A DNA stretch of 64,000 nt from Okamejei kenojei. Its lineage: Eukaryota. Numbering within the stretch: position 1 is the stretch's first letter; the number at the start of each line of letters is the position of its first letter. Shown piece by piece: positions 6,501 through 64,000 of this stretch. Both the position numbers and the translations under genes were made by a program. Under the pieces are notes generated by a model. It was given only the letters and a program-made list of their open reading frames with translations. It was not told the origin of the DNA and made no database searches. Where the stretch lies: contig CM069138.1 of the NCBI GenBank assembly GCA_035221665.1, forward strand, positions 22,692,001 through 22,756,000, in the 5' to 3' direction.

Positions 6501-8010
6501 CCCTTTTGTGTTTAGTCTTAAACAGTTCAGCATGGCCTGCTGTTCTCTCTTTTTTGTGAAGTATGAACTTCCTGCTAGGCATATGCTGAACTGGGACGGT
6601 AGTTTGTATACAAATTCAATTTTGTAATTCTGAATACTTCCGAGTATGTAAAAGTTCAGAGGTAAAAGTGCAGCACACATGATGAAACAAGTGCAACCGT
6701 CCCCCAACTTTAATGAATCGGACATGCAATGTTTTTTTAAGACAACCAGACCCACCTACCTCCATGGTTACCGGTGTTGTGTGGGTTGTCTCCGCAGTTG
6801 TTTCTTCTGGTATTGTGTTGCTGCGTTGTGGGGTTGGCGCGTTTTCCATGAAGGCCGGGCTGGGCCATGGTCTGAAAGACCTCTGTGCAGGTGGGCCGGC
6901 CTTCGAGCTTTCACCACCAGATGGTCTTCCATAGCACCGATGTCTGGTGGGTGTGTAGGGGTGCTGCCGCTGTTGATAGGGGGTTTTAGAGGTGCTTGGC
7001 ACCTTGATCAGGCCTATAGCCTTGGCTTCCTCATGCAGGTCTTTCACCTGCTTCGGGAGGTCCCCCAACAGCAATTTTGGCGCCTGTGTGCTACTTGTCT
7101 TGCATAATTCCGCACTTCTTGATGATGCTCTTCCTGTAACTGTAAATCTCCACTGATTATTACACAGTCTGCTAGAGCATCACGTAACTCTTCAGGCAAA
7201 TCAACCCCATCAGTTGTCCTGGTACTGCTGTGATTTTAGCAGCCAGCAGTTTCCTCTGGAGCTTCCCCTCCTGGCTCCTTATAGATGGGTTCCTGTTGCC
7301 CCAGATGGGGTCATGGACTGCTGGTACTTTAAGAGAAATGGAGTTCTCTGGAGCAATGTACTTCCCAGCCATAAAGTTAATGGCTTGCTCCTGTAGCTGG
7401 TTTGTAGCCATGTATTTTTCACTGGCTTGCAGCTTTGTATAGGCAGTTCTTCTTGAGTTGATACAGCATGTGCCCCACAATTCTTCTGCTGCTCTCTCTT
7501 CTGGCACCTCTCACAGTTGACTGTTCAGCCATTGCCCCTTCTTCAGGGTCAGCCCAGCTCTGACCCCTAATGCTCCCCTGCGAAAAGGGTGAGACATTTG
7601 GCAGTCCTTGAAAGGATCCTGCCGTGGGTCTGCGAAGAGACCCACTGTGACTCTGCCCCTGCATAAGCAGGTCACGCTGGAGCACTGCTCCCCACCCGCT
7701 CCTGCGGGAAAGACGCCCGCCATCGCTATCCATGAACGGGGTGTCTTCAGGTCCGGACCCAGCCGAGTCAACGGACCTGTCCGACTTCCGGGTGGTTTTG
7801 CCGCCGACCGCGGCGCACCTGCGGTCTGTAGCGGCGAGAAGCCGGCAGCTGCTGGCAGCACCTGCAGCTCTGGAGAGACGGCACGCTGCTGGCTGCTTCC
7901 ACAGCAGCGGTATCAGCTGCTGCTCTCCCTTGCGCGACTCCATGGTGCTTCCTCCTGAAAAAGAAACACTCCGAGTCGCCACGCTCACCAGAAAAGGTAA
8001 GACTTACCTT
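3531..8010 (-). mobile_element. DIRS tyrosine-recombinase retrotransposon, copy A (defective; left terminus deleted)
   Basis: Fragmented gag, RT (MAYLDDILIVG), RNase H, methyltransferase-like (PDIDLF) and YR ORFs; right terminus and ICR with 77-bp inverted arms at 3531-3607 and 3750-3826; near-identical to 32151-36733. Confidence 0.93.
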
Positions 8011-8123
8011 CAACAGCAGCTTCATCCTGACGGTTACAAACGTGATGCTCAATGACTCTGCCATCTATTACTGCACAGTGTGGGGAGATATCAGAGGGAA
8101 TGGAACCCAGCTCAACGTAACTA
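8011..8123 (+). pseudogene. 3' remnant of an Ig V(J)-type domain exon (receptor copy 1, first V domain)
   Basis: NSSFILTVTNVMLNDSAIYYCTVWGDIRGNGTQLNVT with DxAxYYC and J-like GxGT-L-V; phase-1 donor gtgagt at 8124; highly similar to the 3' part of 25828-26170. Confidence 0.88.
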
Positions 8124-8718
8124 GTGAGTGCAAATTATATTTGGTTTTATTCACCTATGTGTAACTATATTGGGTGTAATTCGCTTCCCTTGAATAGGCA
8201 AATGTACCAGGAGTACTGAAAGTTACTGGAGCCTGGCTTGTGGTCCCTCTCTAATGGTGTGAGCACTGATATGGTAACTGACCTGTATGTCAGATATGGG
8301 TTGTGGGAAATTAATTTCAATAGGCAGTGTGTTCTTCATTGTGGAGAAAAATAAAAACATTGTTCTATGCTCAGTGTATTAACAGAGCATTGCTCACAGC
8401 TGTTGGAGTTAAGGTACGGGAGAGCAGAACTACAACTTGTCGTGGGTTTAGAGTAACAAATGCTCCTCCTCATTTCAACCAGGAAACACTGATACTTCAC
8501 AGAGCTGAGGCAACATCAATGACCCAGCCAAGGCCAGGGCCCTGTGACCGGCAGAGAAGAAATAGGTTACATGTTAATCACCTGTGGTCATGCCCTCCCA
8601 CAGTCTGACCGTTCATTATTGTCTGGATCTGAGTCTTTGCTCATCTGCATTGCTTTGAAATGGGCCCCTATTACATTTTAAACAGTGTGTTTAATGGTTG
8701 AATTTCCCTCTCAATAAA

Positions 8719-25765: not shown

Positions 25766-25827
25766 TTTAAATAATTTCTAGCAACCCTTATATTCCAATG
25801 ATAGCCTATTGATATCCTCCCTTAAAG

Positions 25828-26170
25828 ATGCAAATCCTCCAATCCTGATCCAATTCCCGAGGCTGGAGTGTGTCACTGAGGGTCACACGACACGGTTATG
25901 GTGCTTCATGAAGAACGCTGAAGTGGGAAACACTGATGTTCACTGGTACCGAGAACTACCCGGGCAGGAAATGGAGTGGGTTTTAACACATGAGGCAGGA
26001 GGCTGCATACGAAGGAGACCAGGCTTCACTGCGGTTCCAGCCATTCAAAGACGCCTCCAACAACAGCTTCATCCTGAATGTCACAAACGTGATGCTCAAT
26101 GACTCTGCCGTCTACTACTGCACAGTGTGGGGAGATATCAGAGGGAATGGAACCCAGCTCGTTGTCACTG
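25828..26170 (+). pseudogene. Complete Ig V(J)-type domain exon with a frameshift (receptor copy 1, second V domain)
   Basis: Acceptor cccttaaag and donor gtaagt, both phase 1; ANPPILIQFPRLECVTEGHTTRLWCFMKN..VHWYRELPGQEMEWVL..GFT/RFQPFKDASNNSFILNVTNVMLNDSAVYYCTVWGDIRGNGTQLVVT. The exon is 343 nt, implying a ~2-nt deletion near 26031. Confidence 0.92.
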
Positions 26171-27567
26171 GTAAGTTCAGTTTACACAATACTAAACGAT
26201 CTCTGTTAGTGTAGATATGGAACATGCAAGGGCTGGGACTGCAGTTTTGCAAGTTAATTTAAGGATGATTTCCGTGTTTTTAAAAATATGATGTATTCAA
26301 TCTTTTGTTTTTCTGTATTTGTTTATGCTTTCTTCTAATGCATTTAAAATTTAAGAAGTTCTTAGACCCTGCAATATTGGGCAGACAAATACATGTAGTA
26401 TCATAGAGCATGGAGACAGGCCTTTCGGCCAAACTTGCCCACACTGACCAACATACCCCAACTGCATCTACTCTATCTATACCTCTTTAAATTTTATATA
26501 TTTGTCTAGGAACACACCTCAATATCTGATACTCCAAGCTTATCCAACTGTGCCTTATAGCTAATACCATTGAATGCAGGCAGGATTGGCAGGACCCATA
26601 CAACGGGATCTTGAGGTGCAAGTCCATGTCTCCCTAAAAGTGCTATTCAAGTAGGTAGGGTAATAAAAGACTACCTACAGAAAACTTGCCTTCTGTGGTC
26701 AAGGTGTTAAGTATTAAAGCCAGCAGATCATGTTGCATCTGTATAACATTTTGGTTCAGCCAAATTTGGAGAATGTCAGGCAGCATCTCTGGAGAAAAAG
26801 GATGGGTGACGTTTTGGGTCGGAGCCCTTCATCAGACACAGTAACAGTGCAAGGTCGAAACATGGGTTCTGACCCAAAACATCAACCATCCGATTTATCC
26901 AGAGATGCTGCCTTACCCACTGACTTAATCCAGCACTTTGTGCATGTATTCGGTATAAACCAGCATTTGCAGTTCCTTTCTATACATATAGAGTGATTGC
27001 TTTGTGGATTATTTCCACTCCATCTACAGGAGTGACCTTTAGCTTCCTGATGTCACCCCTTTAATCTCGCCTCCCACTGCTACTCTGACCTCTCTGTGTG
27101 TCACCTCTGCTCTGTTACAGCGAAACCCAATTCAATCTCCAGGGTCAAATCTTGCAGACATTCAATGATTTCCAAATGAATGCTTATTTGGTTAATTTGA
27201 ATGCATTCCAATAACTGGCCAGGTAAACTCACTGGCTTGTGATCACTCGGTGCTCCCTCTTCCTTCCTTTATCACAGTGCATTTATATCAGAATGGTCAA
27301 TGAAGGTTGCAGGAACAGGATGCCTCTCGGGACTGTGCTTTATACAGTGACCAGTTGGGTCAGCTGGTGGACGCAGGTTGAATAGCAATGTTCCACCAGA
27401 AATTGGATACATTCCAGTGAGAACTTTTGCTGGACTCGGGAATGAGTGGGAGGAATCAGTGGACCACTCTTTCAAAGAGCTGGCACTGAACGATGGGCCA
27501 AGTGGCTTCCTTCTGCACTGACATTATGTTTCCCTGATGTTTAGCCAATGATGTGATTTCTTTGCAG

Positions 27568-27702
27568 TTTCTCAAACGAAGGAGAATCAAGTTGTGGTGA
27601 TGTACATTGCCTGGATCATTCTACCTTTGGTGCTGGGAGTTCTTGCTGGTACTGGAGCCATTTGTAACATCAGACGCAGAGCATCTGGAAGCCACCAGTC
27701 CT
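27568..27702 (+). pseudogene. Transmembrane exon, receptor copy 1
   Basis: Acceptor tttctttgcag and donor gtatgt; VSQTKENQVVVMYIAWIILPLVLGVLAGTGAICNIRRRASGSHQS; 135-nt paralogue conserved at 60293-60427. Confidence 0.9.
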
Positions 27703-28224
27703 GTATGTGTAACTAAATCATTCAGTCTGTGGATTGGTCGGTGGATTGGTCAATGGAGAGTGGGACTTGCACTGCTCGTGAGCAGTGAGAACACACTGCC
27801 ATGTCTCACAACCCGTCTGATGGTTCAGCTTCAGCTGAGAGGAGTTCAACCTCTGGACCTCTCCTGCTTTAGTCTACTCAGAACCTTCCTCTCTGGACAA
27901 ACATTTGGCCATCAGCTCCACCATTAGCTCAACTGCTTCAATTGTTGTCTGATAACTTCCATTCCAAACTCCATGGAGTGTGTATCCATATAAATGGCAG
28001 GTTTAACATGGTCTCAAAATCCTTTCAAAGGACACTCCCCATGAAACTGCTGAATCCTCCATGACATGAAATGTGTGTTGTGTATGTATGTTCTTGCTGT
28101 TCCTATTTCCATGCAGTGGGTGTCTATGATTAGAGTTTACAGCACTTGTTCTCCTGAACAATGAATTGATTTCCGTCCAATATTTCGGACCCTCTGTTCT
28201 GATATATTTCCTTCCACCCTTCAG

Positions 28225-28245
28225 TTGTTCAACCACAAACTGACT
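28225..28245 (+). pseudogene. 21-nt cytoplasmic micro-exon (LFNHKLT), receptor copy 1
   Basis: Acceptor ccttccacccttcag, donor gtgagt; paralogue at 52850-52870. Confidence 0.6.
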
Positions 28246-28659
28246 GTGAGTTTCATAGATTGGGAAACAAAGTCTGTTCACAGACTGCTCTGTACCCACT
28301 GTTGATGGGGTTTGTGTAAAGTATTCAGCATTCCGTCCCTTTCATCTTCTAGGTTCTATGTAAGTGTTTCTCAGTGACTGCAATCTTTGGGTCAACATGC
28401 AAGAGCCTTTACTTGACACTGTGGTTTTCAATTACTCCGTTAGATCCAGTGACTGCAAACAATCTTGAAGCCAGAATCAGCAATGTAGCCCATTGTGTAA
28501 TGTGATGTAGAAATTGAGGATGTAGCCCAGTCCAGCACACAGACCAGATTCCACACCATTGACTCCATCCACACTTCATATTGATTTGGAAAAGCAGCCA
28601 ATATAATCAAAGACGTCCCACCACGTTATTCCACTTCACTTCATCATTACCATGGGCAC

Positions 28660-30470: not shown

Positions 30471-30506
30471 TGACCAAAGTAACTGTCTGATTGTGTTCTG
30501 TTGTAG

Positions 30507-30548
30507 AATGCAGGAGACCACCAGGCAGATCCAAACGCCATCTACATG
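30507..30548 (+). pseudogene. ITAM exon 1 (NAGDHQADPNAIYM), receptor copy 1
   Basis: Acceptor ttctgttgtag, donor gtaaga, phase 0, 42 nt; conserved in the paralogue at 52516-52557. Confidence 0.85.
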
Positions 30549-30638
30549 GTAAGAAATGTGACGTTTAGGACGCTGAAGCATTTCACTGAGCACGAGTTGC
30601 CAAGCTGCTGTTTCCAAAATTTCGGTGTTTTCCGCTAG

Positions 30639-30695
30639 GATTTGCAAAGACCCACTCAGTCGATCTACGGTCATCTCCAAGGTACATTCCAGTAA
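30639..30695 (+). pseudogene. ITAM exon 2 and stop (DLQRPTQSIYGHLQGTFQ*), receptor copy 1
   Basis: Acceptor ttttccgctag; completes YMDL-x7-YGHL; paralogue at 52373-52429. Confidence 0.85.
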
Positions 30696-31699: not shown

Positions 31700-32150
31700 T
31701 AGTTTGGTATAGTGCACATTATTTGCATGGAATTAAGCAAGGCCATTGACAAGATCCCCCATGGAAAGCCAGTCCAGAAGATTACATCACAAGGGATCCA
31801 GGGGAAGCTAGCCATTTGGATACAAAATTGGCTTGGTGGCTGGTCAGATGCTGATGGTGGAGGGTTGCTTTTCAGATTGGAGTCCAGTGACCAGTGATAT
31901 GTCGTAGGGATTGGTGCTGAGTCTACTGTTGTTCATCATCTATATTAGCGATTTAGATGAGAATGTAGGTGGAAAGGTTAAAAAGATTGTGAATTACTGC
32001 AAAATGAATGGATAATAAAAAAGTTAGTTAAGAAAACAACATGATCTAGATCAACCTGGAAAGAGGGCCGGGGGATGGCAGATGATTTAACTCAGAAAAG
32101 TGGCCCAAAGACTGGTAGATACAATGGCGGGTCGACATATGATGAAAGAA
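31700..32150 (+). mobile_element. Degenerate CR1 fragments; the last piece resumes at 36734-37140 after DIRS copy B
   Basis: SKAIDKIPHG..WIQNWL; joining 32150 to 36734 restores YDERMGLLGLYSLEF. Confidence 0.75.
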
Positions 32151-49100: not shown

Positions 49101-52100
49101 GGGAACAACAGGAATTGGAAAAGGAGATTAAACAATTAGATACAGAGAACGCTGCTAATCCATCCATAACAACACATAATAAAATTGCTGTACTGAAATA
49201 TAAATTAAATAAAATATACACAGATCAATTTGTAAAACTCTACCAATACACTAATCAATTACAATTTGAATTCGGAGATAAACCTCAAAAATTATTGGCT
49301 CGTCAATTAAGAAAGATGGAGGGAGAAAAAATAATCCATAGGATTAAATCATATAATGGCGAACCATTAGTACAACCTAAAGATATTAATGAGAGATTTT
49401 TGCAATATTATAAAAATTTATATTCAGCTAAAACAACAGAAATCAAGATAGGAATCGAAACATTTAAAAAAAATGTGAGTGGGTTGGATTCACAAAATAG
49501 AGAATTATTAAATGCTGAAATTTCAGTAAAAGAAATCAAAGAATCTATCAGATCATTAAAAAACGGTAAAACACCAGGACCAGATGGTATAGGCCCGGAA
49601 TTTTATAAAACATTTTATGATCTGATTGCACCATGTCTGAAGACACTCTATGAATATATTTATATTCACCAGAAACTACCAGAAACGTTAAATGAATCTA
49701 TTATAACACTTATACCTAAAATAGACAAAGACCTGGATGACCCAGGATCATATAGAGCTCTAGCTCTTTTAAATACTGATCAAAAGATAATAACTAAAAT
49801 ATTAGCACAAAGACTAAGTACAGTTATTAATAAATTAATTCACCCCGATCAAACAGGATTTATACCAAAATGATATTCCTCATATAACTTGAGACGGTTA
49901 TACAATATTATATATTCAAAAAGAGATATTAATAAAGATCTAGTAATTATTTTGTTAGATGCAGAGAAAGCCTTTGACCAGGTGCAATGGTCTTATTTGT
50001 TCTCGGTTATGGAAACTTTTAAGTTGGGAGAGAAGTTTATTACTTGGGTTAAATTATTATACACTAATCCAACAGCCAGAATAATAACAAATCAAATGCT
50101 ATCAACTAAATTTAATCTATTCTGAGGCTGCAAACAAGGTTGTCCTCTATCCCCACTACTGTTTGCACTTGCAATAGAACCTTTAGCTCAACGGGTGAGA
50201 TTACAATCTGAAATATATGGATATGACACCAGAGATACTGAAAATCAAATTTCTTTATATGCGGATGATATATTACTTTATATTACAAAGCAGGAAATTA
50301 GTATCCCGAATTTACTAAAATTAATATCTGAATTTGGATTATTTTCAGGATATAGTATTAATTGGAATAAAAGTGAACTTATGCCAATAATGGTAAATAA
50401 CATACATATACTACAACAATTTCCCTTTAAGACAGCAAATGAAAAAAATCAAATATCTTGGAATTCATGTCACAAAAAGATTTGATTCTTTATTTAAATC
50501 CAATTTTCCACTTTTATTGAATAAATTAAATAAGAACATTTTATATTGGAAAACATTACCTATCTCAATGCTAGGTAGAATTAATGCAATAAAAATGATT
50601 TTTCTCCCGCAATTACTATATCTTTTTCAATTGATTCCGATATATCTTCCTAAAAATGTTTTTAAGAAAGTTGATTCTATTGTCACCAACTTTATCTGGG
50701 ATTATAAGAGTCATAGAATAAACAAAAAACATTTATGTAAACCAAAAATAAATGGAGGTCTATCACTACCAAACTTTATGTTTTATTACTGGGCAGTTAA
50801 TATTAAAAATATGAATTTTTGGTTTGTAGAGACAGATAAACAACCAACCTGGTTAAAAATGGAAAAAGAACATTGTTCGCCTTTTGAAATTAGTTCGATT
50901 TTATTCACCAATATAAAAATAGGTAAGAAAACCTATGGTGAAAACCTTATAATAGAAAGTGGAATACGTATCTGGAAACAAATAAAGAAAACACTAAAAT
51001 TGGAATGTATACCACTAGCCCTTACCATTGTAAATAATGTTACTTTTAAACCCTCAATGATGGACAAAGGTTTTGTACAATGGAAAAATTATGGAATTAA
51101 TAAGATGGGAGATCTCTATAGGGAAAATTATTTCCTTTCATTTCAAGAATTACAACAAATTTATGGATTACATTCAAAAGATTACTTTAGATATCTACAA
51201 ATTAGAGACTATGTAAAAGCAAATACACAGGAAATTAGAAATAGAAAGTCAGAAATTTTAGATGAATGCCTAAATAAATACACGAACACAGAAAAATCGA
51301 TATCATATATTTATAATATTTTACTGGAAAACGATGTCCCAATGACAGAAATATATAGGCAATCATGGGAAAATGAATTAGGTCAAATTATTAGACCTGA
51401 AATATGGGATGAAAGTTTACAACATATACACCACTGCTCGTTAAATACTAGACACTCTCTTATACAATTTAAAATATTACATAGACTACATTATTCAAAA
51501 TCCAAACTACATAGTATTTTTTCAAATGTATCTGCCAAATGTGATAAATGTCAACACTTAGAAGCTAACTTAACGCACTCATTTACAAATTGCGTATAAA
51601 TTACTAAATTTTGGACAGAGATATTTAAGATAATTCCGAATGTTGTTAATATGAATCTGATCCCCGACTCAAAGTTAATAATACTGGGAATATTAGAAAC
51701 AGATCAATTAATAACAAAGAATCAAAGAAGTTTTATTGATTATAGTCTAATAATTGGGAAAAAAATTAATATTGAAATTCTGGAAAGGTCCTACATCCCC
51801 CACAATCAAAATGTGGATTACAGAAATGTCAGAGACACTTCATCTGGAAAGATTAAGGCTTGTCCTTTTGGACAGGTTGGATCTTTTCAGAGGAATATGG
51901 TCTCCATTTATTGAATATCTAAAGGGTCAAAATGGTTCGGTACGAGAGCCTGATTGAAGCCTGAATAACGGAATAGATGAAGAATCATGTATAACAAATC
52001 ATAGATATATCTCCAATGATGGATAACTTTTTAAATTCTCCATTCATTTCTTTATTTTTGATTTCCAACTCTTACTTTATTTTTCTCTATCTTTTCTCAC

Positions 52101-52231
52101 CTGCAAAAAAAAGTATAGAAATATATAAGACATAATTGCTAATATTAATAAAATTACGAATGTATGTGAGAAGTATATTCTATTAATATGTACTTACGTC
52201 TAATAAAAATATTTAACAAAAAAAATAAAAA
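46190..52231 (+). mobile_element. Full-length L1/Tx1-type LINE (ORF1 ~46315-47330; ORF2 48154-51957 EN-RT-CCHC, disrupted)
   Basis: SWNVKG, GDLN, SRIDYF, SDH, LDAEKAFD, QGCPLSPLLF, LYADD; A-rich tail; 14-bp TSD taatttactctctg at 46176-46189 and 52232-52245. Confidence 0.95.
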
Positions 52232-52372
52232 TAATTTACTCTCTGAACCAAACTTGTAATCAGACTGAACTCCTGTAGGCCCATCTCCATGCTTGTCGTT
52301 CCAGCCTGAATCCTCAACCTTTCTGCAGCAGTTGACAGATATCACATGGTGCAGATGCGCCATTGTCAACAG

Positions 52373-52429
52373 TTACTGGAACGTACCTCGAAGACGACCG
52401 TAGATGGACTGAGTGGGTCTTTGCAAATC
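52373..52429 (-). CDS. Terminal ITAM exon 2 of receptor copy 2 (DLQRPTQSIYGRLRGTFQ*)
   Basis: Acceptor ttctgctag; paralogous to 30639-30695. Confidence 0.82.
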   Translation of the reverse strand, partial: DLQRPTQSIYGRLRGTFQ

Positions 52430-52515
52430 CTAGCAGAATACAAAGAAATGTTAGAAACAGCTGTTAGCAGCTCGTGCTCAGCAAAACACTTTAACGTCTT
52501 AAATGTGACTGTTAC

Positions 52516-52557
52516 CATGTAGGTGGCGTTTGGATCTGCCTGGTGATCTTCTGCGTT
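52516..52557 (-). CDS. ITAM exon 1 of receptor copy 2 (NAEDHQADPNATYM)
   Basis: Acceptor ttgtgttgtag, donor gtaaca, phase 0. Confidence 0.82.
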
Positions 52558-52849
52558 CTACAACACAACACAATCAAACAGTTACTTTGGTCAAAAAGCT
52601 GGCTTCAGAATTCACTGCAGTCACCATGGTCACTCGTGTTATTGAAAACTACAAAGTTAGGTGTCAAGTGCACAGAAGGAAGTGGAGGTTGTTGTCAAGT
52701 TAAGTAAAAGATTGCAGTCACTGCAAATAATTCACAGAGGAACAGGAAGATGAAAGGAACAGAATGCTGGGCACTTCACACAAACCTCATTGGCAGGTTT
52801 TGTTGAGCAACCTGAGAACAGACTTTGTTTCCCCATCTCTGAAACTCCC

Positions 52850-52870
52850 AGTCAGTCTGTGGTCGGGCAA
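52850..52870 (-). CDS. 21-nt micro-exon of receptor copy 2 (LPDHRLT); donor mutated to GG
   Basis: Acceptor conserved; donor reads gggagt versus gtgagt in copy 1. Skipping it preserves the frame. Confidence 0.45.
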
Positions 52871-53295
52871 CTGAAGGGAGAGAGAAAATAAATCGGAGCA
52901 GAGGGTCTGAAAGATTGTAGCAGGAATCCTGGCAGCTCCCTTCATTGTTCAGGAGAACAAGTACCCAATATGTTCAGTGCGATGATGAGCCATGATGGAA
53001 CAACACTCATAAGAAAAATATAATGTCTCCACACACTGAAACGAGTGCAATCTTTAATCTGGGACACACACTCCATGGAAATGGGAACAACGAGCACACA
53101 CACACACTACACACACTCCATGTCACGCAGGAGTCAGCAGTTTCAGAGGAGCTGAAGTACTAAGAATGCTTATCATCAAAGCCATGGAGAGAGATTTTTG
53201 AAAGGATTCTAAAACCATATTAATCAAGAACCTGCCTTTACTGTGGTTAAACACTCCAATTAGTTTGAAGTGAACATTATCAGACAACAGTTGAA

Positions 53296-56200
53296 TTTTA
53301 CTTCGGAGTCACGTGAGTGACTACGTGAATAGAAGCCCGTACAGCCGTTGGTGCAACATGACGTCAGACGTTGGTGCAGTCGGACGGTTGGAGCAGCAGC
53401 GCTCCTCCGAGCGGTAAGTTTAAAAACGGAGGTAAGGTTGTTGAAATTTTTACCATAGGTCATTTCTGCGACGGTTTGAAGTACTTGGAGATAGGTTGCA
53501 GAAAGTAAAGAAGGTGTCGGCGAGGCGCTCCGCAGGTAGAAAGGAGACTGACCAGGAGAGTGTTGGGGAAGGAGGCCCGTCTGGTACACCTGGTCCGGTG
53601 CTGGCTACACAGCCAGTGGTTGCAGACCCACTGCCGGGGGGCAGTGAAGGCTTGCCAGTAGGGCGGAAGGCCACTGGCAAGTCTGTCAGGCCCGTAGATG
53701 AGTCGGGCATGGAGGTTATACCCTCCATAGGAGAGTCCGTTTGCTCACGGCTCTCCCAAGTCGAGATTTTATTACAAAGAATGCTTGATAGGGACCAGCT
53801 CCGTGAGGAGGAGTGGTGCCCAAGCCAGGCTGATGGAGAGCTTGTGCTAGCAGCACCTGTTCCAGAGCTGCAGAACTATCCTGCCTGTGAGGAGGATGTT
53901 CCATCAGTGCAGTTTGCTGACACTGATTCTATGCTGGGGGAGAGCAGTAAAGAAGTTCGGTTGGAGGTAATTCCGAACATTGCTGGGAAGTTTGCTCAGC
54001 CTAGAGAGGCAGGAGAGGCGATTGATGGGGAATTGGCTGAAGCCATTCAGTATATGCTCTCCCACCAGTTACAGGAGCTAGCTATGGATGAAGCAGCAAA
54101 AAACTATAAAGCTCCTGTTAATTGTGATCTCCTGAAGGTACCGGTGGTTAATCACCAAATTTGGTCACAGATGGGTATGCCTGCTAGGGCCCAGGAGATG
54201 AAGTTTCAAAAAGTGCTTAAACTGTTGTCAGCAGGTATTACAGCTGTGGTGAAAGTGATTGATCCAAGCAATGTGGTTGAAGCACACCAGGACGGACTGG
54301 GTTTCCTTTGTAATGCGTTTTTTGAAATCAATAACATCAGGAGGGCCGCTATTAGGCCAGTGCTTAATCCGAATTTGGCAAGTTTGTGTAAACCAACCAG
54401 TGTACCACCACAAAATCTGTTGTTTGGAGGCAACCTTGCAAAAAGGGTCAAAGAATGTCATGAAGATGTTAAAATTATGGCCCTCATTAAGCCGGCTGGT
54501 AAGCAGGGCAAAAGGTTTTCTCCGTATTGGAAAGGAACTAATGTGGATGCAGGAGAAGGAACGAGCCGTTCAGGTCTTCAATTTCGGAACTGGCAGGCTG
54601 CCAGCATGAAGGGGAAGGTGCCTTTCTCCACAAGAGGTCGAGGACAACAAGGTCCGCAAGGAAAGATGCAGGTAAGGAAAACATCAACAGACGATGAATT
54701 AATTGATGTTCCTGTTCAAATTGGGGGAAGGTTAAAATTGTTTCTCAAACAATGGCAGCAGTTGACATCAGATTTGTTCATACTTAGTAGTATTGAAGGG
54801 GTGAAAATTGAATTTTACTCTAAGGACAGTCTACCTAATCAACATTTTCCTAGTCGTAAACTTGTTTTTTCAGATGAAGAAAATGTGCTTATTCAAGCAC
54901 AGATTCAGTCGTTGCATAAGAAAGGGGTAATGGAGCCTTCTGTCTATCAAAGTCGACAATTTGTGTCAAATATATTTCCCAGATCTAAAAAGACTGGGGG
55001 GTGTAGAATTATTTTGGATTTATCGAGTTTGAACAAGTTTGTTTGATATAGGCATTTCAAAATGGAAACCTTTACCACGGCCAAACATCTAGTGTCCAAA
55101 GGGTGTTATATGGCAACTATTGATTTAAAGGATGCATATTACTCAGTGTCTATTCATGAGGATGATAGAAGATATTTGAAATTTATTTGGATGACTCAGC
55201 TGTGGCAATTCAGGGCATTGCCGAATGGATTAACTTCAGCTCCTAGATTATTTACTAAATTGGTAAAACCTGTGTTAGCGTTACTTAGAGCTAAGGGGCA
55301 TGTGGTAATGGCCTATTTAGATGATATTCTGATTGTTGGAAAGACTCATGCTGAAACTCAATCATCAGTTTCAGTTGATAAAATCACTTTTGAACAAATA
55401 TCACTTTTGAACAAATGGGATTTGTGATTCACCCAGATAAATCTAAATTATCACCAGTCCAAATTATTGATTATCTGGGATTTACCATTAATTCCAATCA
55501 CATGTTGATAACTTTGCCCAGGGATAAATTGAATCAGTTAATTGAGGACTGTGTTAATCTCGTTGGAGAACAAAGGCCTTTGATTAGACAAGTAGCCAGG
55601 TTAATTGGGAAGTTGGTGGCAGCATTTCCAGCTGTGCAGTATGGTCCTCTGCATCATCAACAATTACAATGATCAAAGGAACAGGCACTGAGAATACAAA
55701 GGGGCCATTTTGATAGGCCTATGCAGTTGTCAGCTGGGGCGATTGCTGACATACAATGGTGGATAGCAAATGTTTCAACACGTTTTAGGAAGGTTTTGGT
55801 GGAACCACCGTCATTGATATTACAGACTGATGTAAGTGCACTGGGTTGGGGTGCAACAGATATGTCTTCTAGTTGTGGAGGCAGATGGAATGTGGATGAG
55901 ACATCGCTTCTTCAACTAAGAGGGATTAATTATTTAGAGTTGTTGGGCACCTGGTATGGGCTCAAAGCTTATTGTTCTACAAGGAGGGATCTGCATGTGC
56001 AGGTTCAGATTGACAACACCACAGCAGTGGCATACGTAAACCACATGGGTGGAGTTAAGTCACAGTCTTGTGATAGACTGGCTAACCAGATTTGGAGCTG
56101 GTGTATTGACCAAAATATCTGGCTTTCAGCACTTTATTTGCCAGGAAGGTTCAACACGGTAGCTGACACTAGGTCATGTCAGTTTAATGACAACATTGAA

Positions 56201-58073
56201 TGGATGTTAAACCAGGATGTATTTAATCAAATGATTGTTCAGTATGGATTGCCAGATATTGACTTGTTTACATCTCGATTAAATCATCAGTTACCTAGAT
56301 ATGTTTCATGGGATCCAGATGCCGGGGCAGTAGCAGTGGATGCGTTTCGCTGCTTTGGGGAGGAATGTTTGTGTATGTATTTCCTCCATTCTGTCTCATC
56401 AGCAATGTTTGCAAAAGATCAAGGAGGACTCCGCTTCTGGGGTATTGGTAGTGCCAGATTGGCCTACACAAGCATGGTTTCCCGTTGTATTACAAATGGC
56501 TAGGGAGCCTTACATGATTATTCCCAAGAATAAAAATCTATTGGTAAATCCAGTCACTGGGGATCAACATCCTTTACATGATCGTATTGATCTGTTAATT
56601 TGCAGATTTTAAGGAGGCCATACCTGGGGAGAGGACTGTCTCATCGGACTGTGGATGTTCTCATGTCGGCCTGCAGGGATAGTACACAGCAGCAATATAT
56701 CACCTATATAAAGAAGTGGGAGCAATTCTGCCTGCAGCAGAATATTGTATATCACACTGCAGGGATCACGGACGTATTGGAGTTTTGTCAACTCTTTATT
56801 TCGACCAAAAATTAAGTTATAGTGCGATCAATTCAGCCAGAAGTGCTCTGTCTTCTTATTTACCTATGAATGCAGAATTACATACAGTAGGGACACATCC
56901 GTTAGTTTCACGATTCATGGAGTTTTCAATTCTAATCCTCCTAAACCCAGGTATGCCGGGATTTGGAATGTGAGTGAGGTTCTTATGGTTCTTCGCCAGT
57001 GGGCTCCGGTTACAAGCCTATCTATAGCCAAATTAACTATTAAGGTGGTCATGCTTATGGCGTTGGTTTCAGCTCAACGTGTACAAACGTTGCAAAAGCT
57101 ACGGCTGGATAGAATGCATGTGTCGGCAGATGCCATTATAGTTTATGTCTATGATTTGCTTAAACATAATAGAAGAGGCATGACAGGATGTAAGATTGTG
57201 TTTTCAGCATACCCCGCAGATGATCGCTTGTGTGTAGTCTCACATTTATCTCGTTACATTGAGATTACTCAACCTCTGAGAGGAACAGAGTCGGCTTTGT
57301 TTATTAGTCACAAAAAACCACACAGTAAGGTGTCAGTGCAAACAATTTCAAGGTGGCTAAAGCAGGTCCTGGCAAGTGCTGGAATTGATACTGATAAATT
57401 CAAATCTCATTCCACCAGGGCGGCATCAACTTCCGCGGCAAGGGCGATGGACGTGCCAATAGGCCATATCCTCGCGGCCGCAGGATGGTCCAGTGAGCTA
57501 ACTTTTCAGAGGTTTTATCACAAGCCGATTTCAAGGCTCGGGGTGTTTGCTGATTCTGTTTTGAGTACTGTTACACTTTCCCCCTGAGTTAGAGGGGTTT
57601 GTTATGATTTGTTTGTAAATAAACTGTTATTCATTTAATAAATGTGTTACTGATGCATGATTGATCGTTAACGACTTTTGAGTCAATCCAGGCAGTGTGA
57701 ACGTCGGATTTCGGTCTACGGCATGAATTCACAGTGCTTTGAAGTCTTCACGTAGTCACTCACGTGACTCCGAAGTAAAATAGTAAGATTAAACGAGAAC
57801 TTACCAGTTTGAAGTTTGATCTTTATTTTATGAGGAGTCGAGTTGAGGGACTACGTGCCCTCCGCTCCCACCCTCATAGATCTCATCTGGTAGTTCTAGT
57901 TTTATCATCTTACCATTATACTTCAGTCATTGTTAGCTGTGAATTCATTCCGCTGCTTTGAAGATTGACGCACCAACGGCTGTACGGGCTTCTATTCACG
58001 TAGTCCCTCAACTCGACTCCTCATAAAATAAAGATCAAACTTCAAACTGGTAAGTTCTCGTTTAATCTTACTA
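53296..58073 (+). mobile_element. DIRS retrotransposon, copy C (second family; full length, a few stops and frameshifts), in an intron of receptor copy 2
   Basis: gag, RT (IDLKDAY, YLDD), RNase H (DNTTAVAY), methyltransferase-like (PDIDLF), YR (SAQR, HSTR, AAGWS, RFY); ITR/ICR architecture; flanks rejoin to match copy 1 at ~27925-27955. Confidence 0.96.
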
Positions 58074-58325
58074 GTAATTGTGCTAATAGTGGAGCTGATG
58101 GCCAAATGCGTGGCCAGAGAGGATGGTTCTGAGCTGACAATAGCAGGAGAGATCCAGAGGTTGAACTCCTCTCAGGTTAAACAGCTGAAGCTGAACCTTC
58201 AGTGGATTGTTAGACCTGGCAGTGTGTTCTCACACACCTCCTCACAAGCAGTGCATGTCCCACTCTCCATCAACAAATGCACCATGTACATTTACAAATC
58301 ATAAAGACATTACGACAATACCCAA

Positions 58326-59629
58326 TAGGCTGTGGGCCGAGGAGCTTTTTCGTTCAGGTTCGTGACCCAACTCACAGAACTACCTGAATTTTTAACATAT
58401 TGTGTAAAAATATTATATAAATCATACCTGAAACTCGTCAAGAACAAAACATGCACATTTTGTTTAAATATGACAAAAACATCCAATTTTCCAAGTAGTA
58501 ATTGTCCAATCAATGCGCGTTTGACATTGAGGTCAGACGGAAATTGACCAATCCCACATTTTGTTTTATGGTCGCTAGGCAACGAGGAGTTTGGGATCAT
58601 GGCTGCCTCATTACATCAACAGCAATAACAAGGTTTCCAAGGGTAAATGTAATGCTAACCTTGTTGATAATTTTGATTTTCAATTGATTTATCTATATAA
58701 AGTTTGGATGTGAACTGGAAAATAAAAATTATAAATAACAAATGTACAGCTAGGGTTAGGATTAGGGTCAGGGTTAGGGTCAGGGTTAGGGTCAGGGTCA
58801 GAGTCAGTCAATAGGTCGGTCGGGCTTGTCGGTAGGCCGATGGATGATCTGGAGGATTGGTTGGGCTGTTGGACCGCTAGTGGATGCTGCGAAGGGTCAG
58901 TTGGGCTGTCGGACCGCTAGTGGATGCTGCGGTCGGGCAGTTGGTAGGCCTGTGAGTCCTGTGAGGGCTCGGTCAGGCTGTTGGCCCACTAGTGGATGCT
59001 GCGAGGGGTCGGTCGGGCTGTTGGTAGGCCTGTGAGTGCTGCAAAGGGTCGGTCGGGCAGTTGGTAGGCCAGTGAGTGCTGCGAGAGGTCGGTCGGGCTG
59101 TCGGCCGGCCGGTATTGCAGCGAGCGAGTGGGTGGACTGATGGAGCCTGCGCTATGGGGGTGCTGAAGGTGGCCTGGGCAGCATGCAAGGCAATGCTGCT
59201 CCCCACCATCATCACCATGACGATCCAGAAGGGCATGCTGGCTGAGGTGGACTCGCTGAGTGGCGACACACACGGAGCCCGCAGCCAGTCCCAAAGTGGC
59301 TCCAGCTCCAGCCGTGGGCAGCTCTGGAAGGGGGGCGAGTTAGGGTTAGGGTTAGGCAATTTCCTCTCCATGGAAGACGCCTTAGCCTTCCCCCAGCCTG
59401 GCACTGCCCCAGTCCCATTATGGCCATGAGCCCCACTCTGCACACTGGCAGTCAGTGGGGTTCAGTAAACGGGGGAACCCAGAAGAACTGCCCTCACCCA
59501 TTAATTAGGCTGGTTCAGGAGCTGGACCTCTGTGGCACTCATTCAAAAAACACACACAATTATATTAATTATACTATTTTATATAATATAATTATACATA
59601 ATTATATATGATTACAGTCATATTCACAA

Positions 59630-59668
<39 letters not shown>

Positions 59669-59939
59669 TATAATAATATAGTTTAAATAGACTGCATCAC
59701 GGAAATAGGCTCCCCATGCTGTAATATGGGCATTGGACACTAGATGGTGCTTACTAGGTGGTGCTCCACCATTTTCTAATTAATTTAATTAATTAATGTG
59801 CAACTTTTGGCACTGACGACGTATGACTTCCTTCTCAATTATATTTTATCTAAATCTGTGCAAAATTTTATGTAGTTCCAAGACATGGGTCACGAAAGTT
59901 GATTTCTCGAAATATTTTTGATTCTCGACCCACAGCCTA
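58326..59939. mobile_element. Non-autonomous DNA transposon with TAG...CTA termini and 3-bp TSD (Academ-like)
   Basis: TIR taggctgtggg(c/t)cgag with subterminal ttcgtgaccca and gaactac matches at both ends; CAA at 58323-58325 and 59940-59942. Superfamily call rests on the termini only. Confidence 0.7.
58750..59105 (+). repeat. Telomere-like (TTAGGG/TCAGGG) tract followed by a ~40-bp GC-rich minisatellite
   Basis: Directly visible; another TTAGGG tract lies at ~59339-59356. Confidence 0.85.
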
Positions 59940-60053
59940 CAATGATCCACAAAGCTAGTGGAGTAAATACCTGATGGGAAAACTAATAGCACACCATCAG
60001 GGAGAGCGATCCCAGCACAGGCCTGCTTATCCCAGAAAACCATCAGAACTCAC

Positions 60054-60127
60054 CGGGACATTTCTTGCCATGGAAATATTTTCATAATCTACTCCTGGGG
60101 TCTGGTCATCAGCCGCTCCAGACTGTG
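60054..60127 (-). CDS. Cytoplasmic exon with ITIM-like/YEN motif, receptor copy 2 (SQSGAADDQTPGVDYENISMARNVP)
   Basis: Acceptor ttctctatttcacag, donor gtgagt; the 74-nt length converts phase 1 to phase 0, exactly linking the TM exon to the ITAM exons. Confidence 0.85.
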
Positions 60128-60292
60128 CTGTGAAATAGAGAACAAGGTCACACAAAGAGCAGCCTCAGAGCTGTGAATCCCACTTTGTCGCCCAACAGCA
60201 TAGTGACGGCTTTTTTACAATAGGAACCAGCCCTTCCGATTTCACTAACCACACAGCAATCAGATCAGACTGAATGATTTAGTTACACATAC

Positions 60293-60427
60293 AGGACTGG
60301 TGGCTTCCAGAAGCTCTGCGTCTGATAAGGCAAATGGCTCCAGTAACAGCAAGAACTCCCAGCACCAAAGGGAGAATGATCCAGGCAAGGTACATCACCA
60401 CAAATTGATTCTCCTTCGTTTGAGAAA
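60293..60427 (-). CDS. Transmembrane exon, receptor copy 2
   Basis: VSQTKENQFVVMYLAWIILPLVLGVLAVTGAICLIRRRASGSHQS; canonical splice sites. Confidence 0.9.
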
Positions 60428-61174: not shown

Positions 61175-64000
61175 GGACTTCCGGTGGCGCTAAAGGTGGA
61201 GTAAAGGTGTGCGGCAGCTAGCACCATGCAAAAATCTAAAAAAAACGGGAGAAAAATAATGGACTGACCTGCAGAGATCGCACCGGCAGCTTGAGTGACG
61301 TCATCAGACCGTGACTCCGAAGATCCAATGTCGCAACAACACACTCCCCAAAGGGATCAGCAAAAAAACTCAGTAGGGATAAACTACCGACGGAAGAAGC
61401 AGGCCCGACTGAAGCCTCGGGCTCAGTTTTCACGTCGTCCCAGGAGGACGTGTCAAAGGGCCAAAAGACAAAGACCAAAAAAACTGAAATGCAGGAACTT
61501 CGCATCCTTATCTTAAAGGAAACTGCAAGTATAAAAGAAGATTTGAAAATCTTTTAAAAAGAAATGAACTTTAAAGAAGAATTGAAAAGTTTTAAAGAAG
61601 AAATTAAAGAAGAATTTTCAAGTTTTAAAGAAAAAATCACTGCTTTTGTCCATGAAGAGCTGGCTACCATGAAGGATGAAATGTCTGTAAATTTTGATCT
61701 ACAAATTGAAGAAGTAAACGAGAAAATAAATTTGATGGAATCTAACTTTAATGCTAGGTTGGATCCCATATTCATTGCAGTAAATCAACAAACTGTAGCT
61801 ATAATTCAATTAGAGTTAATTGCCGGAACAAGCGCTGATACTACAAAAAGACTTCTCTCTGAGAACAAGCATTTATCAGACTTACTGCATAAAGTAACTG
61901 AAAAATGTATTGACTTGGAGGGACGTCAGAGACGTCAGAATTGTTGGTGTTCAAGAACGTAAAGAAGGACATTATGATCTCCGTGACTGTGCTGCAGACA
62001 TTAAAAAAAGTCTTGAATTTAGATCAAAAGCCTTTATTAGGCCGGGCACACAGAAATATGAGATGCTGTGCGAGTCCGAGTGCCCTCCTCCCCCAAGGCA
62101 ACTGATAGTGAAGGTGCAGTATGATCATGTTTTTGATGGTATTATGAAAAAAATTGCTGACACCAGAAATCTCCAGTTTGAAGGAGACAAGATTAGTATA
62201 TTTAGAGATTATCCTGTGGAGGTGGCCAGGAGGAGAGCACTCTATACTGAGACAAGAGGGATTCTGAAGAAGATAAAAGACTTGAGATATGGATTGATGT
62301 AGCCGCAAGATTGAGAGTCACCTACAAGAAGCAAGAACATTTCTTCACCGGTCACAAGGAGGCATCAGAATATCGAGAATTTGAGTGAGGACTGAACAAT
62401 ATTCATAAGATATCATCATCTTGCTGAGAATAAATGGAACTTTAAATTGTTATATTCAAGAACTAATGAAAGCTGATAATGATAGCTGAGCAAGTTTTCT
62501 TGCTATTGACATATAATTTTTATATTTTAGTACTAATTACTACTAATAATTACTAATTATTATTAATTAGAATAACTAGTTAAAAAGATGAACGGTAAAT
62601 AAGGTTTAATTTAGGTACTTTATTAATAAAAATATGTTTTGTTTTAATACATTTGACTAATATCTATTTAGGAGAATAATAATTTCTCATTACTCGATTA
62701 CTAATCCTTTGGACCTAAAACAGTTTTCTCACCATCCCCATAAATTGTTTTTATTGAATTTTTCTTTTGTACTAAAGCGTGGAGCTAGTAATAATTTTTT
62801 CTAAGGCTACGGAAGTCCTTAGATGGTTAGCCACGTTAGTGTGGCTATCACTAACTACACTAATTGTAGATGTAATTTCTTTTTTTCTTTGCACTTTACT
62901 AATCATTTATTTTTTTACTCTCTTTACTTTTTACTTAATTATAATCTTAAAACTGAATTAAATTATAAGTATTATTTATGGAGATATGTCCGTGAGGAAG
63001 AGCTATTAGATTTAAAATTAATCTATCTTGTGTTCGGGTGGAATGTCGGGTTTAGTGTGCTGAGCCACCTGCTCTTTTATAGACTACCCTACCCATAAGA
63101 TGCAAGACGTTAACAGGAAAACTGGGGGTCAAGGAATTACTTTTTGTAGTTGGAATGTTAAGGGAATTAATGAGCCAATCAAGAGAGGTAAAGTATTAGC
63201 ACATTTAAAATTACTCAAAGCAGACATAACATTTCTTGATGAAACTCACCTTAAAAATGAAGCGCAACATAGATTGAAAGCAAAATGGATTGCCGAAACA
63301 TCTTCATTCTTCATAGAGAGGTTGCAATTCTAATCCGTAAAGGTATACCTTTTAAACATATATCAACTATTGCGAATATTAATGATAGATATATCATACT
63401 AGTGGGTGAATTACATCTACAAAAAATTGTTGTTCTTAACGTCTATGGACCAAACTTTGACAACCCTTTGTTTTTCAAGGATATACTTAATACTATCCCG
63501 GAACTAGAAGAATATAATGTAATAATTGGTGGAGATTTAAACTGCACATTAGATCCTTATTTAGATAGATCATTAAGACAAAGGAAAATAAAATCCAAGA
63601 CAAGTGAATTAATAAATTCATACATTAATACTACTAATATCAAAGTAGTATCAAGTAATATCAAGCCTGGAGAATCGAAAACCCATCCGGATGAGAATAT
63701 TCGTTCTACTCACCGGTACATAAAACCTACTCAAGGATAGGTTACTTTTTAGTAGACTCTAAACTTAGCCCATTTGCTTATAATTCGAAATATCATAATA
63801 TTATAATTTCGGACCATGCACCTTTAACATTCATGATTAAATTAAGTGGAATCACCGAGAAGCAGACACAATGGAGACTTAATCCTCAAATTTTAAATGA
63901 TAAAGTATGTTGTGAATATCTTATTACACAGATAAATATGTTTTTTGAGTACAATGATCGTCCTGAAATATCTGCCTCCTTTCTTTGGGAAACATTTAAA
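61175..64000 (+). mobile_element. L1/Tx1-type LINE 5' part (ORF1, spacer, endonuclease), running off the window
   Basis: Same 5' end gacttccggtggcgc as 46190; ORF1 (DLEGRQRRQN, ISIFRDYP); ORF2 start MQDVNRKTGGQGITFCSWNVKG at 63100. Confidence 0.92.

What the first reader, a model, noticed from the sequence alone, without database searches (positions are those of the whole stretch)
52373..60427. Hidden immune receptor carrying both an ITIM-like motif and a canonical ITAM in its own tail
Seen: five small - strand exons scattered among a DIRS and a DNA transposon splice in frame to TM(no charged residue)-CLIRRR..-VDYENI-..-DPNAT-YMDL-QRPTQSI-YGRL-RGTFQ*. The splice phases (1,1,0,0,0) are self-consistent. 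Known: YxxL-x7-YxxL is the ITAM consensus, and a phase-0 intron just after Y+1 is the layout of ITAMs in CD3, CD79, FcRg and DAP12 genes. VxYxxI fits the ITIM consensus, and YEN is also a Grb2-SH2 motif. Inference: this is an adaptor-independent, dual-signalling V-type receptor of cartilaginous fish. I cannot assign it to a named gene. Conceptual analogues are the agnathan APAR/NICIR/TCR-like receptors, NITRs and FCRLs.
Basis: partly seen in the sequence, partly recalled or inferred. Interest (0 to 1): 0.9.

Follow-up and report, generated by a model that had tools for sequence, protein, structure and literature searches.

The report
Skate immune receptor tail with ITAM
These are the real membrane-anchor and signalling exons of a skate immune receptor from a large, conserved but unstudied shark-and-ray family that carries its own activating motif (ITAM) instead of borrowing one from an adaptor protein.

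Summary
All have AG/GT boundaries and consistent phases. Each matches, in the same order, the C-terminus of RefSeq "uncharacterized" proteins from nine shark and ray species. These proteins are leader + 2-5 germline-joined VJ domains + uncharged TM + Y-E-N-[IV] + YxxL-x7-YxxL. The fifth exon (52870) is rejected: it is out of frame between its neighbours and has no homologue.

All 18 complete tails keep the ITAM and the YxN tyrosine. The ITIM consensus is kept in only 2 of 18, so the conserved feature looks like a Grb2-type docking site, not an ITIM.

The same ectodomain family also carries a second, ITIM/ITSM-type tail, which points to a paired activating/inhibitory family.

A decayed inverted paralogue lies at 25.8-30.7 kb. 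The V exons of this copy lie outside the window. No RNA run could be found, so expression here is unproven.

The closest skate RefSeq model stops in the intron after the TM exon, so the tail is indeed unannotated there. The scan noted relatives elsewhere in this genome. Verdict: a new member of a known kind, of moderate interest.

The parts
60293..60427 (-). Exon A: short stalk, transmembrane helix (about 60392-60324, YLAWIILPLVLGVLAVTGAICLI, no charged residue) and juxtamembrane RRRASGSHQS. Phase 1 at both ends.
   Evidence: phmmer hit to Mobula XP_072123079. 40/44 identical to Amblyraja radiata LOC116976517. 93% nt identity to the paralogue's exon against 86.5% in flanking intron.
60054..60127 (-). 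Exon B (74 nt, phase 1 to 0): (S)QSGAADDQTPGVDYENISMARNVP. The motif VDYENI lies at 60092-60075.
   Evidence: tblastn gives 71% identity to Mobula tails (E 4.5e-5 within the window) and 64% to Pristis. Same position in all ITAM-type tails. The 3' boundary matches the read-through point of isoform P0011.
52516..52557 (-). Exon D (42 nt, phase 0/0): NAEDHQADPNATYM. It ends with the first Tyr and Y+1 of the ITAM.
   Evidence: ADPNATYM is 8/8 identical to Pristis P0052, and 9/14 residues are identical to the Heptranchias and Pristiophorus tails. 90.5% nt identity to the paralogue against 79.6% in intron. The boundary after TYM matches the read-through isoforms P0001 and P0057.
52373..52429 (-). 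Exon E: DLQRPTQSIYGRLRGTFQ and stop. It completes the ITAM YMDL-QRPTQSI-YGRL (ITAM span 52521..52391 across the intron).
   Evidence: LQRPTQSIYG(H/R)L is 10-11/13 identical to Mobula, Hypanus and Hemitrygon tails. 91% nt identity to the paralogue.
52812..52870 (-). It is more conserved between the two copies than its flanks, which remains unexplained.
   Evidence: With GT donors its length is 47, 59 or 85 nt, none in frame between B and D. No similarity to any family protein. 86% against 77% identity to the paralogue.
53330..58073 (+). DIRS-like retroelement inserted in the B-D intron. It is absent at the same point of the paralogue.
   Evidence: Self-comparison. Pfam RVT_1 and Phage_integrase (tyrosine recombinase) hits.
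58284..60053 (.). Repeat-rich part of the B-D intron: an (AT)n run and a CCCTAA-flanked tandem array. Together with exon B and part of intron 1, this block (60265-58284) is missing from the paralogue.
   Evidence: Not classified further.
61175..64000 (+). Probable LINE insertion upstream of exon A. It interrupts the intron that should lead to the V exons, which therefore lie beyond the window.
   Evidence: Homology to the paralogue's intron stops at 61174. The ORFs look like LINE ORF1 and endonuclease by eye. Two of these ORFs (61564-61959 and 63285-63737) were scanned against Pfam and gave no hit. No V-exon match beyond 60431.
25827..26171 (+). Membrane-proximal VJ exon of the inverted paralogue (..DSAVYYCTVWGDIRGNGTQLVVT). 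It is broken by a frameshift near 26031.
   Evidence: Pfam V-set on both halves. 84-88% identity to skate proteins, with the match switching frame at 26030-26032.
27568..27702 (+). TM exon of the paralogue, with Gly and Asn substitutions in the helix. The sequence right after it lacks exon B.
30507..30695 (+). ITAM exons of the paralogue: NAGDHQADPNAIYM (30507-30548) and DLQRPTQSIYGHLQGTFQ* (30639-30695).
7925..8245 (+). C-terminal half of another VJ exon (..NSSFILTVTNVMLNDSAIYYCTVWGDIRGNGTQLNVTS). It is either a relic or the distal V of the paralogue.
   Evidence: tblastn gives 87% identity to Leucoraja erinacea LOC129699366.

Best explanation
The stretch holds the last four exons (TM plus three cytoplasmic exons) of a member of an elasmobranch-wide multigene family of non-rearranging type I receptors. 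The ectodomain of these receptors is 2-5 tandem germline-joined VJ domains.

Shown here: the exons, their phases and their order. Also shown is their exon-by-exon homology to annotated proteins of sharks and rays, and the strict conservation of three tyrosines: Y-E-N-[IV], then YxxL-x7-YxxL.

Inferred mechanism. Ligand-driven clustering lets a Src-family kinase phosphorylate the receptor's own ITAM. The ITAM then docks the tandem SH2 domains of Syk/ZAP-70, so the receptor activates without a DAP12, FcR-gamma or CD3-zeta partner. This fits its uncharged TM. The membrane-proximal pY-E-N-[IV] most likely docks Grb2/Gads-type SH2 domains, as LAT, NTAL, DAP10 or CD28 do, and so adds a costimulatory or scaffold branch in cis.

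Sister genes with the same kind of ectodomain carry a different TM and an ITIM/ITSM-type tail. The family therefore probably works as paired activating and inhibitory receptors.
For: Sequence and phases.

Homology. phmmer of exon A against 1.84 billion representatives gave a single hit, a Mobula birostris protein whose tail continues with B-, D- and E-like segments. A tail-only search returned 10 ray proteins of the form SP-VJ-VJ-TM-tail. A profile search returned 245 family members in at least 20 shark and ray species. Exon-by-exon alignments show A, B, D and E each matched in order.

Motif conservation. All 18 complete ITAM-type tails keep YxN and YxxL-x7-YxxL/I, always with a 7-residue spacer. 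Among stingrays, tails are 89-96% identical while the V domains are 41-91% identical.

Exon ends. Isoform read-throughs mark the same exon ends in other species.

Selection within the window. Exons are 91% identical to the in-window paralogue without gaps, against 83% plus many gaps for introns.

Second tail type: inhibitory-type tails sit on the same ectodomain family.
Against: No RNA evidence for this locus. No RNA run holds it, and the runs found are DNA of a relative.

The V and leader exons of this copy are outside the window, so its intactness is unknown.

The neighbouring paralogue is clearly decayed, so copies of this family do die here. The intron between B and D is 7.5 kb of transposons.

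All signalling steps (kinase, Syk/ZAP-70, Grb2) are inferred from motif knowledge and were not tested.

In this particular copy the YEN site also fits the ITIM consensus (V at -2), so SHP-1/2 binding is not excluded.
Confidence: 0.8

Rival explanations
1. The exons are genuine family exons, but this particular copy is a silent or dying gene, a pseudogene in the making like its neighbour.
For: The inverted paralogue 22 kb away has a frameshifted V exon, has lost exon B and has Asn/Gly substitutions in its TM. A LINE-like insertion separates exon A from any V exon. No RNA run holds the stretch. The closest skate RefSeq model lacks the tail.
Against: All four exons are open, every splice site is canonical and all three motif tyrosines and their +3 residues are intact. 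The TM is identical to that of an annotated Amblyraja gene. Large TE-filled introns are normal in this genome.
Confidence: 0.25
2. One reading: VDYENI is a working ITIM that recruits SHP-1/2, so the receptor both activates and self-limits.
For: VDYENI fits [SIVL]xYxx[IVL] in this copy and in one Mobula gene. From knowledge: CD72's second ITIM-like motif, LTYENV, shows such sequences occur in inhibitory receptors.
Against: Position -2 is Ala in most homologues, and only 2 of 18 fit the ITIM consensus. Asn at +2 is invariant, which is the determinant for Grb2-type SH2 domains rather than SHP SH2 domains. The family already has dedicated inhibitory members with ITIM/ITSM tails.
Confidence: 0.15
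3. The splice model is a chance construct of short ORFs among transposons.
For: The exons are very short (42-135 nt) and were chosen by eye in 8 kb. One of the five (52870) is indeed spurious.
Against: Four collinear exon matches to independent RefSeq proteins of sharks and rays, with identical exon ends. A conserved copy in the same window has exons better kept than introns.
Confidence: 0.01

Closest known systems
RefSeq 'uncharacterized protein' family of elasmobranchs (e.g. Mobula birostris XP_072123078, Mobula hypostoma LOC134350038/LOC134350340, Hypanus sabinus LOC132403309, Pristis pectinata LOC127568036, Amblyraja radiata LOC116976517, plus Heterodontus, Heptranchias and Pristiophorus models)
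   Same: Same TM, the same three cytoplasmic segments in the same order, and the same YEN and ITAM tyrosines. The VJ exon of the in-window paralogue is 84-88% identical to skate members.
   Different: This copy's ectodomain is not visible in the window. Skate RefSeq models lack the tail exons. The family has no name and no experimental characterisation that I could find.
NKp30 / NCR3 and the 'shark NCR3 family' (Kinlein et al. 2021, Immunogenetics 73:333; paper not held, so its content could not be checked)
   Same: A non-rearranging VJ-type V domain with a G-N-G-T-x-L-x-V J motif. 'NCR3-like' is the nearest named cluster by language-model features (0.95; a lead only).
   Different: From knowledge, NKp30 has one V domain, an Arg in the TM, no ITAM, and signals through CD3-zeta/FcR-gamma. 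This family has 2-5 V domains, an uncharged TM and its own ITAM. By HMMER the nearest outgroup was Ig lambda V regions, and no NCR3-named protein appeared in the best 120.
Teleost NITRs and hagfish NICIR/APAR (from knowledge, not tested here)
   Same: Germline VJ-type domains on innate-type receptors, multigene clusters, and paired activating and inhibitory forms. NICIR carries an ITAM in its own tail.
   Different: Different lineages and domain sets (NITR: V + I). Activating NITRs use a charged TM and DAP12. No sequence relatives of this tail were found outside elasmobranchs.
CEACAM3/CEACAM1, FcgammaRIIA/IIB, SIRP and FCRL paired receptors (from knowledge)
   Same: Adaptor-independent activating members with an ITAM or ITAM-like motif in their own tail, paired with ITIM/ITSM members that share the ectodomain type. 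The family's inhibitory tail (..FYADIQF..TEYAVIK) resembles SIRP-alpha-style ITIMs.
   Different: Ectodomains are not tandem VJ domains. No detectable sequence homology of the tails.
DAP10/CD28/LAT-type YxN sites combined with a DAP12-type ITAM; second-generation chimeric antigen receptors
   Same: A Grb2-type YxN site followed by an ITAM on one chain, beneath V domains in tandem. This is the same logic as scFv-TM-costimulatory-ITAM constructs.
   Different: An analogy of design only. YEN[IV] lacks the +3 Met needed for PI3K p85 binding.

Membership tests
ITAM | YxxL/I - 6 to 8 residues - YxxL/I in a cytoplasmic tail | tested here: met
   YMDL-QRPTQSI-YGRL downstream of a TM and an RRR stop-transfer signal. 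The same motif and the 7-residue spacer occur in 18/18 complete homologous tails.
ITAM | Motif encoded by two exons with a phase-0 intron after Y+1, said to be shared with CD3, CD79, FcR-gamma and DAP12 | tested here: inconclusive
   Met for this gene (exon D ends ..TYM, exon E starts DL..). The same boundary is implied in Mobula and Pristiophorus by read-through isoforms. The comparison with CD3, CD79, FcR-gamma and DAP12 gene structures rests on prior knowledge and was not tested here.
ITAM | Phosphorylated motif binds Syk/ZAP-70 tandem SH2 domains | not testable with these tools
   Needs biochemistry.
ITIM | [S/I/V/L]-x-Y-x-x-[I/V/L], conserved among orthologues | tested here: not met
   VDYENI fits in this copy, but only 2 of 18 homologous tails fit. 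Position -2 is Ala in the rest.
Grb2-type SH2 docking site | Y-x-N, conserved | tested here: met
   Y-x-N in 18/18 tails, and Y-E-N-[IV] in 16/18. Binding itself was not tested.
Elasmobranch multi-VJ receptor family (RefSeq 'uncharacterized') | TM plus tail segments homologous and collinear with family members | tested here: met
Elasmobranch multi-VJ receptor family (RefSeq 'uncharacterized') | Leader plus two or more tandem VJ domains upstream of the TM exon | not testable with these tools
   The upstream exons of this copy lie beyond the window's end. The in-window paralogue has a VJ exon 1.4 kb upstream of its TM exon.
NKp30 / NCR3 | Single VJ domain, basic residue in the TM, no tyrosine motif, adaptor-dependent | tested here: not met
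   Family members have 2-5 V domains, the TM has no charged residue, and the receptor has its own ITAM.
NKp30 / NCR3 | Closest V-domain relatives are NCR3 proteins; MHC linkage | tested here: inconclusive
   The language-model neighbour is 'NCR3-like', but the HMMER outgroups are Ig lambda V regions. Linkage is not visible in the window.

The most novel reading that the evidence does not exclude
The family is an undescribed, roughly 300-million-year-old elasmobranch system of 'natural single-chain receptors'. Tandem antigen-receptor-like VJ domains are wired directly to a Grb2 site plus an ITAM, with inhibitory counterparts. In at least one ray gene (Mobula hypostoma LOC134350038, isoforms X1 and X2) the two tail types appear to share the very same leader and V exons. 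One locus might therefore issue both an activating and an inhibitory receptor with the same specificity. Such a receptor would be a living model of how a pre-RAG, non-rearranging VJ receptor could signal without CD3 or CD79.
Probability: 0.3. Interest if true: 0.7.

Novelty: new member of a known kind. Interest (0 to 1): 0.5.

Why it matters
Sharks and rays are the oldest lineage with antibodies and T-cell receptors, yet their innate-type receptor families are barely described. This family is large, is conserved across sharks and rays, and is built from antigen-receptor-like VJ domains.

Its tail signals on its own, through an ITAM plus a Grb2-type site, and it has inhibitory sisters. That combination is the elasmobranch counterpart of NITR, KIR, LILR, SIRP and CEACAM-type paired systems. 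It also bears on how VJ receptors signalled before they acquired CD3/CD79 partners.

Practically, the result shows that skate annotations truncate these genes, because the tail exons are separated by transposon-filled introns.

Tried and rejected
RNA evidence. The look-up of sequencing runs found no RNA holder of the tail stretch. Read laying on 52100-53300 showed only DNA contigs of a relative, 90-95% alike and covering introns as well, plus LINE fragments. The single 'joint' (52614>52929, ends CT..TC) is an indel of another copy, not a splice.

Joined model. Every search used single exons by reference or database proteins.

Exon C (52870): rejected.

A wrong turn, corrected. I first suspected exon B was an artefact carried in a 2-kb insertion absent from the paralogue. 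The reverse is true: the paralogue lost it.

Uninformative searches. The PDB sequence search with the V half returned only antibodies. Pfam found nothing in the TM exon.

Literature. Six full-text searches found no description of a multi-VJ ITAM receptor family in cartilaginous fish. The three most relevant papers are not held: Kinlein 2021, PMC8273117; Flajnik 2012, PMC3709836; Ohta and Flajnik 2015, PMC4594805. UrIg/UrIg2 (PMC12227049) is a different VJ-C1 gene.

Tail-only search. A search with a shark tail found no named protein with a related tail.


Full report
WHAT IS IN THE SEQUENCE

Reading the minus strand and translating each proposed exon by reference confirms four exons.
- Exon A, 60427..60293: SQTKENQFVVMYLAWIILPLVLGVLAVTGAICLIRRRASGSHQS. 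It enters and leaves in phase 1.
- Exon B, 60127..60054: (S)QSGAADDQTPGVDYENISMARNVP. It leaves in phase 0.
- Exon D, 52557..52516: NAEDHQADPNATYM.
- Exon E, 52429..52373: DLQRPTQSIYGRLRGTFQ and stop.

Every acceptor is an AG behind a pyrimidine run, and every donor is GT (GTATGT, GTGAGT, GTAACA). The helix has no charged residue. The tail holds VDYENI and YMDL-x7-YGRL, with the intron exactly after Y+1.

With any available GT donor it is 47, 59 or 85 nt long, so it cannot keep the frame between B and D. It also resembles nothing in any relative.

The 7.5-kb B-D intron contains a DIRS-like element with reverse transcriptase and tyrosine recombinase. It also contains a repeat-rich block that I did not classify.

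A SECOND COPY IN THE WINDOW

Self-comparison shows an inverted paralogue on the plus strand.
- A VJ-type V exon at 25827-26171.
- A TM exon at 27568-27702.
- ITAM exons at 30507-30548 and 30639-30695 (NAGDHQADPNAIYM / DLQRPTQSIYGHLQGTFQ*).

Introns are alike too, so this is a segmental duplication. Even so, the exons are better kept: 91% identity with no gaps, against 83% with many gaps for introns.

The paralogue is decayed. Its V exon changes frame near 26031. Its helix has acquired Gly and Asn. The block holding exon B is missing, so A would run into a stop if spliced to D.

At first this absence made me suspect that exon B was spurious. Homology showed the opposite.

HOMOLOGY

phmmer of exon A against 1.84 billion representatives gave one hit, a Mobula birostris RefSeq protein. 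Its isoform X1 ends ..YLAWLILAVVLGVLAVTGGIFLIRRRAFRNHPS / HPATATDHQNPGADYENVSVARAVP / GSRGHQVDSNNTYM / ALQHPAQSIYGHLQADNKPPSRS. Those are the same four segments in the same order.

A search restricted to that tail found ten ray proteins. Each is a leader, two VJ domains, this TM and this tail.

A profile of eight of them (A1) found 245 relatives at E<=1e-10.
- Sharks: Heptranchias, Heterodontus, Pristiophorus, Scyliorhinus, Chiloscyllium, Rhincodon, Stegostoma, Cetorhinus, Carcharodon, Mustelus.
- Batoids: Mobula, Hemitrygon, Hypanus, Pristis, Narcine, Amblyraja, Leucoraja, Rhinoraja.

These proteins have two to five V domains. All are named 'uncharacterized' or carry inconsistent automatic names (IGSF3-like, pIgR-like, SIRP-like, JAML-like).

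tblastn and exon-wise local alignments place A, B, D and E of the window on these tails.
- Exon B: DDQTPGVDYENISMARNVP against DHRSPGVDYENVSMARDVP.
- Exon D: ADPNATYM is 8/8 identical to Pristis.
- Exon E: LQRPTQSIYGRL against LQRPTQSIYGHL.

Read-through isoforms in other species end their shared part exactly at the window's exon ends: after ..SGSHQS (Amblyraja), after ..VP (Hemitrygon), and after ..TYM (Mobula, Pristiophorus).

The window is probably from a skate. Its exon A is 40/44 identical to Amblyraja radiata LOC116976517, and even the intron read-through (CMCN) is the same. That RefSeq model stops there, so in skates the tail really is unannotated.

WHAT IS CONSERVED

Among the proteins I could fetch, 18 have a complete tail of this type. 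All 18 keep Y-x-N, and 16 keep Y-E-N-[IV]. All 18 keep YxxL-x7-YxxL/I, always with a spacer of seven.

The residue two before the first tyrosine is Ala in most, and only 2 of 18 fit the ITIM consensus. The conserved feature is therefore a pYxN site, the preference of Grb2-family SH2 domains (established knowledge; binding was not tested). It is not an ITIM, although this skate copy happens to fit both.

Among stingrays the TM and tail are 89-96% identical even where the adjacent V domains are only 41% identical.

A PAIRED FAMILY

The same ectodomain family carries a second, unrelated TM and tail: LVSILVLVLLFCILITAICYV-KKWACFQ..NTVYATV..FYADIQF..TEETTEYAVIKRA. These motifs are ITIM/ITSM-like.

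A galeomorph variant keeps YENI but ends ..QIYMNV.

In Mobula hypostoma LOC134350038, isoforms X2 and X1 share 250 identical residues (leader and two V domains). They then diverge into the ITAM tail or into a further V plus the inhibitory tail. This is either true alternative 3' exon usage or a merged gene model.

MECHANISM (INFERRED)

- The receptor has an uncharged TM and its own ITAM, so it should activate without an adaptor through Src-family kinases and Syk/ZAP-70.
- The YEN site should add a Grb2/Gads branch.
- The inhibitory sisters should oppose it.

WHAT IS MISSING

- No RNA run holds the stretch. The runs found are DNA contigs of a related organism, 90-95% alike and covering introns, so no splice junction could be seen.
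- The V exons of this copy lie beyond what I read as a LINE-like insertion, outside the window.

COMPARISON WITH KNOWN FAMILIES

By language-model features the nearest named cluster is 'NCR3-like' (a lead only). The J motif GNGTQLVV also recalls NKp30. However, the defining NKp30 features are not met: one V domain, Arg in the TM, no ITAM.

By HMMER the nearest outgroup is Ig lambda V regions.

A search with a shark tail found no named protein with a related tail.

Six literature searches found no description of such a family. The paper most likely to hold one, Kinlein et al. 2021 on the shark NCR3 family, is not in the library.

First-stage notes of this scan list similar VJ receptors, including ITAM and ITIM/ITSM tails, elsewhere on this piece and in this genome. 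I treat these as leads only.

VERDICT

It is wrong in stressing an ITIM. It is also incomplete, because the gene belongs to a large, conserved, computationally annotated but uncharacterised family.

Noticed in passing
window 25827-30695 (+): Inverted paralogue of the finding's gene that looks like a pseudogene. Its VJ exon changes frame near 26031, its TM helix has Gly/Asn substitutions, and the YEN exon is deleted so that TM-to-ITAM splicing would hit a stop. Its ITAM exons are still open.
   Followed up: yes
window 52812-52870 (-) and 28225-28283 (+): The rejected 'exon C' is more conserved between the two copies (86%, no gaps) than its flanks (77%). It stays open in two frames in both copies, although no family protein contains it. 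It could be a chance island, an untranslated or alternative exon, or a regulatory element.
   Followed up: partly
window 7925-8245 (+): C-terminal half of another VJ exon (..YYCTVWGDIRGNGTQLNVTS), 87% identical to a Leucoraja erinacea protein, with no recognisable N-terminal half. It is either a relic or the distal V domain of the paralogue 17 kb upstream of its next exon.
   Followed up: partly
window 60003-60053 (-), intron just after exon B: The first ~17 codons of the intron after exon B, read in frame (VSSDGFLG*AGLCWDRS), resemble the read-through tail of a Hemitrygon isoform (VSSDAFLREVGLCGDRS). This is intron sequence conserved between a skate and a stingray.
   Followed up: no
proteins P0005 / P0025 (Mobula hypostoma LOC134350038, isoforms X2 / X1): The two isoforms share 250 identical N-terminal residues, then carry either the ITAM tail or an extra V domain plus the inhibitory ITIM/ITSM tail. 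This may be one gene making both an activating and an inhibitory receptor, or a merged model.
   Followed up: partly
proteins P0064, P0065, P0066, P0069, P0073 (Mustelus, Rhincodon, Scyliorhinus, Carcharodon, Chiloscyllium): A galeomorph-shark tail variant keeps the Y-x-N tyrosine (YENI in four of the five, YANI in Carcharodon) but replaces the two-tyrosine ITAM by a single ..QIY[MTV]N[VM].. or ..LIY[ME]NV.. tyrosine. This suggests loss or remodelling of the ITAM in that lineage.
   Followed up: no
window 32149-32516 and 57711-58073: DIRS terminal sequences occur in both loci and in both orientations. This matches another first-stage note about a flip-flop DIRS terminus.
   Followed up: no
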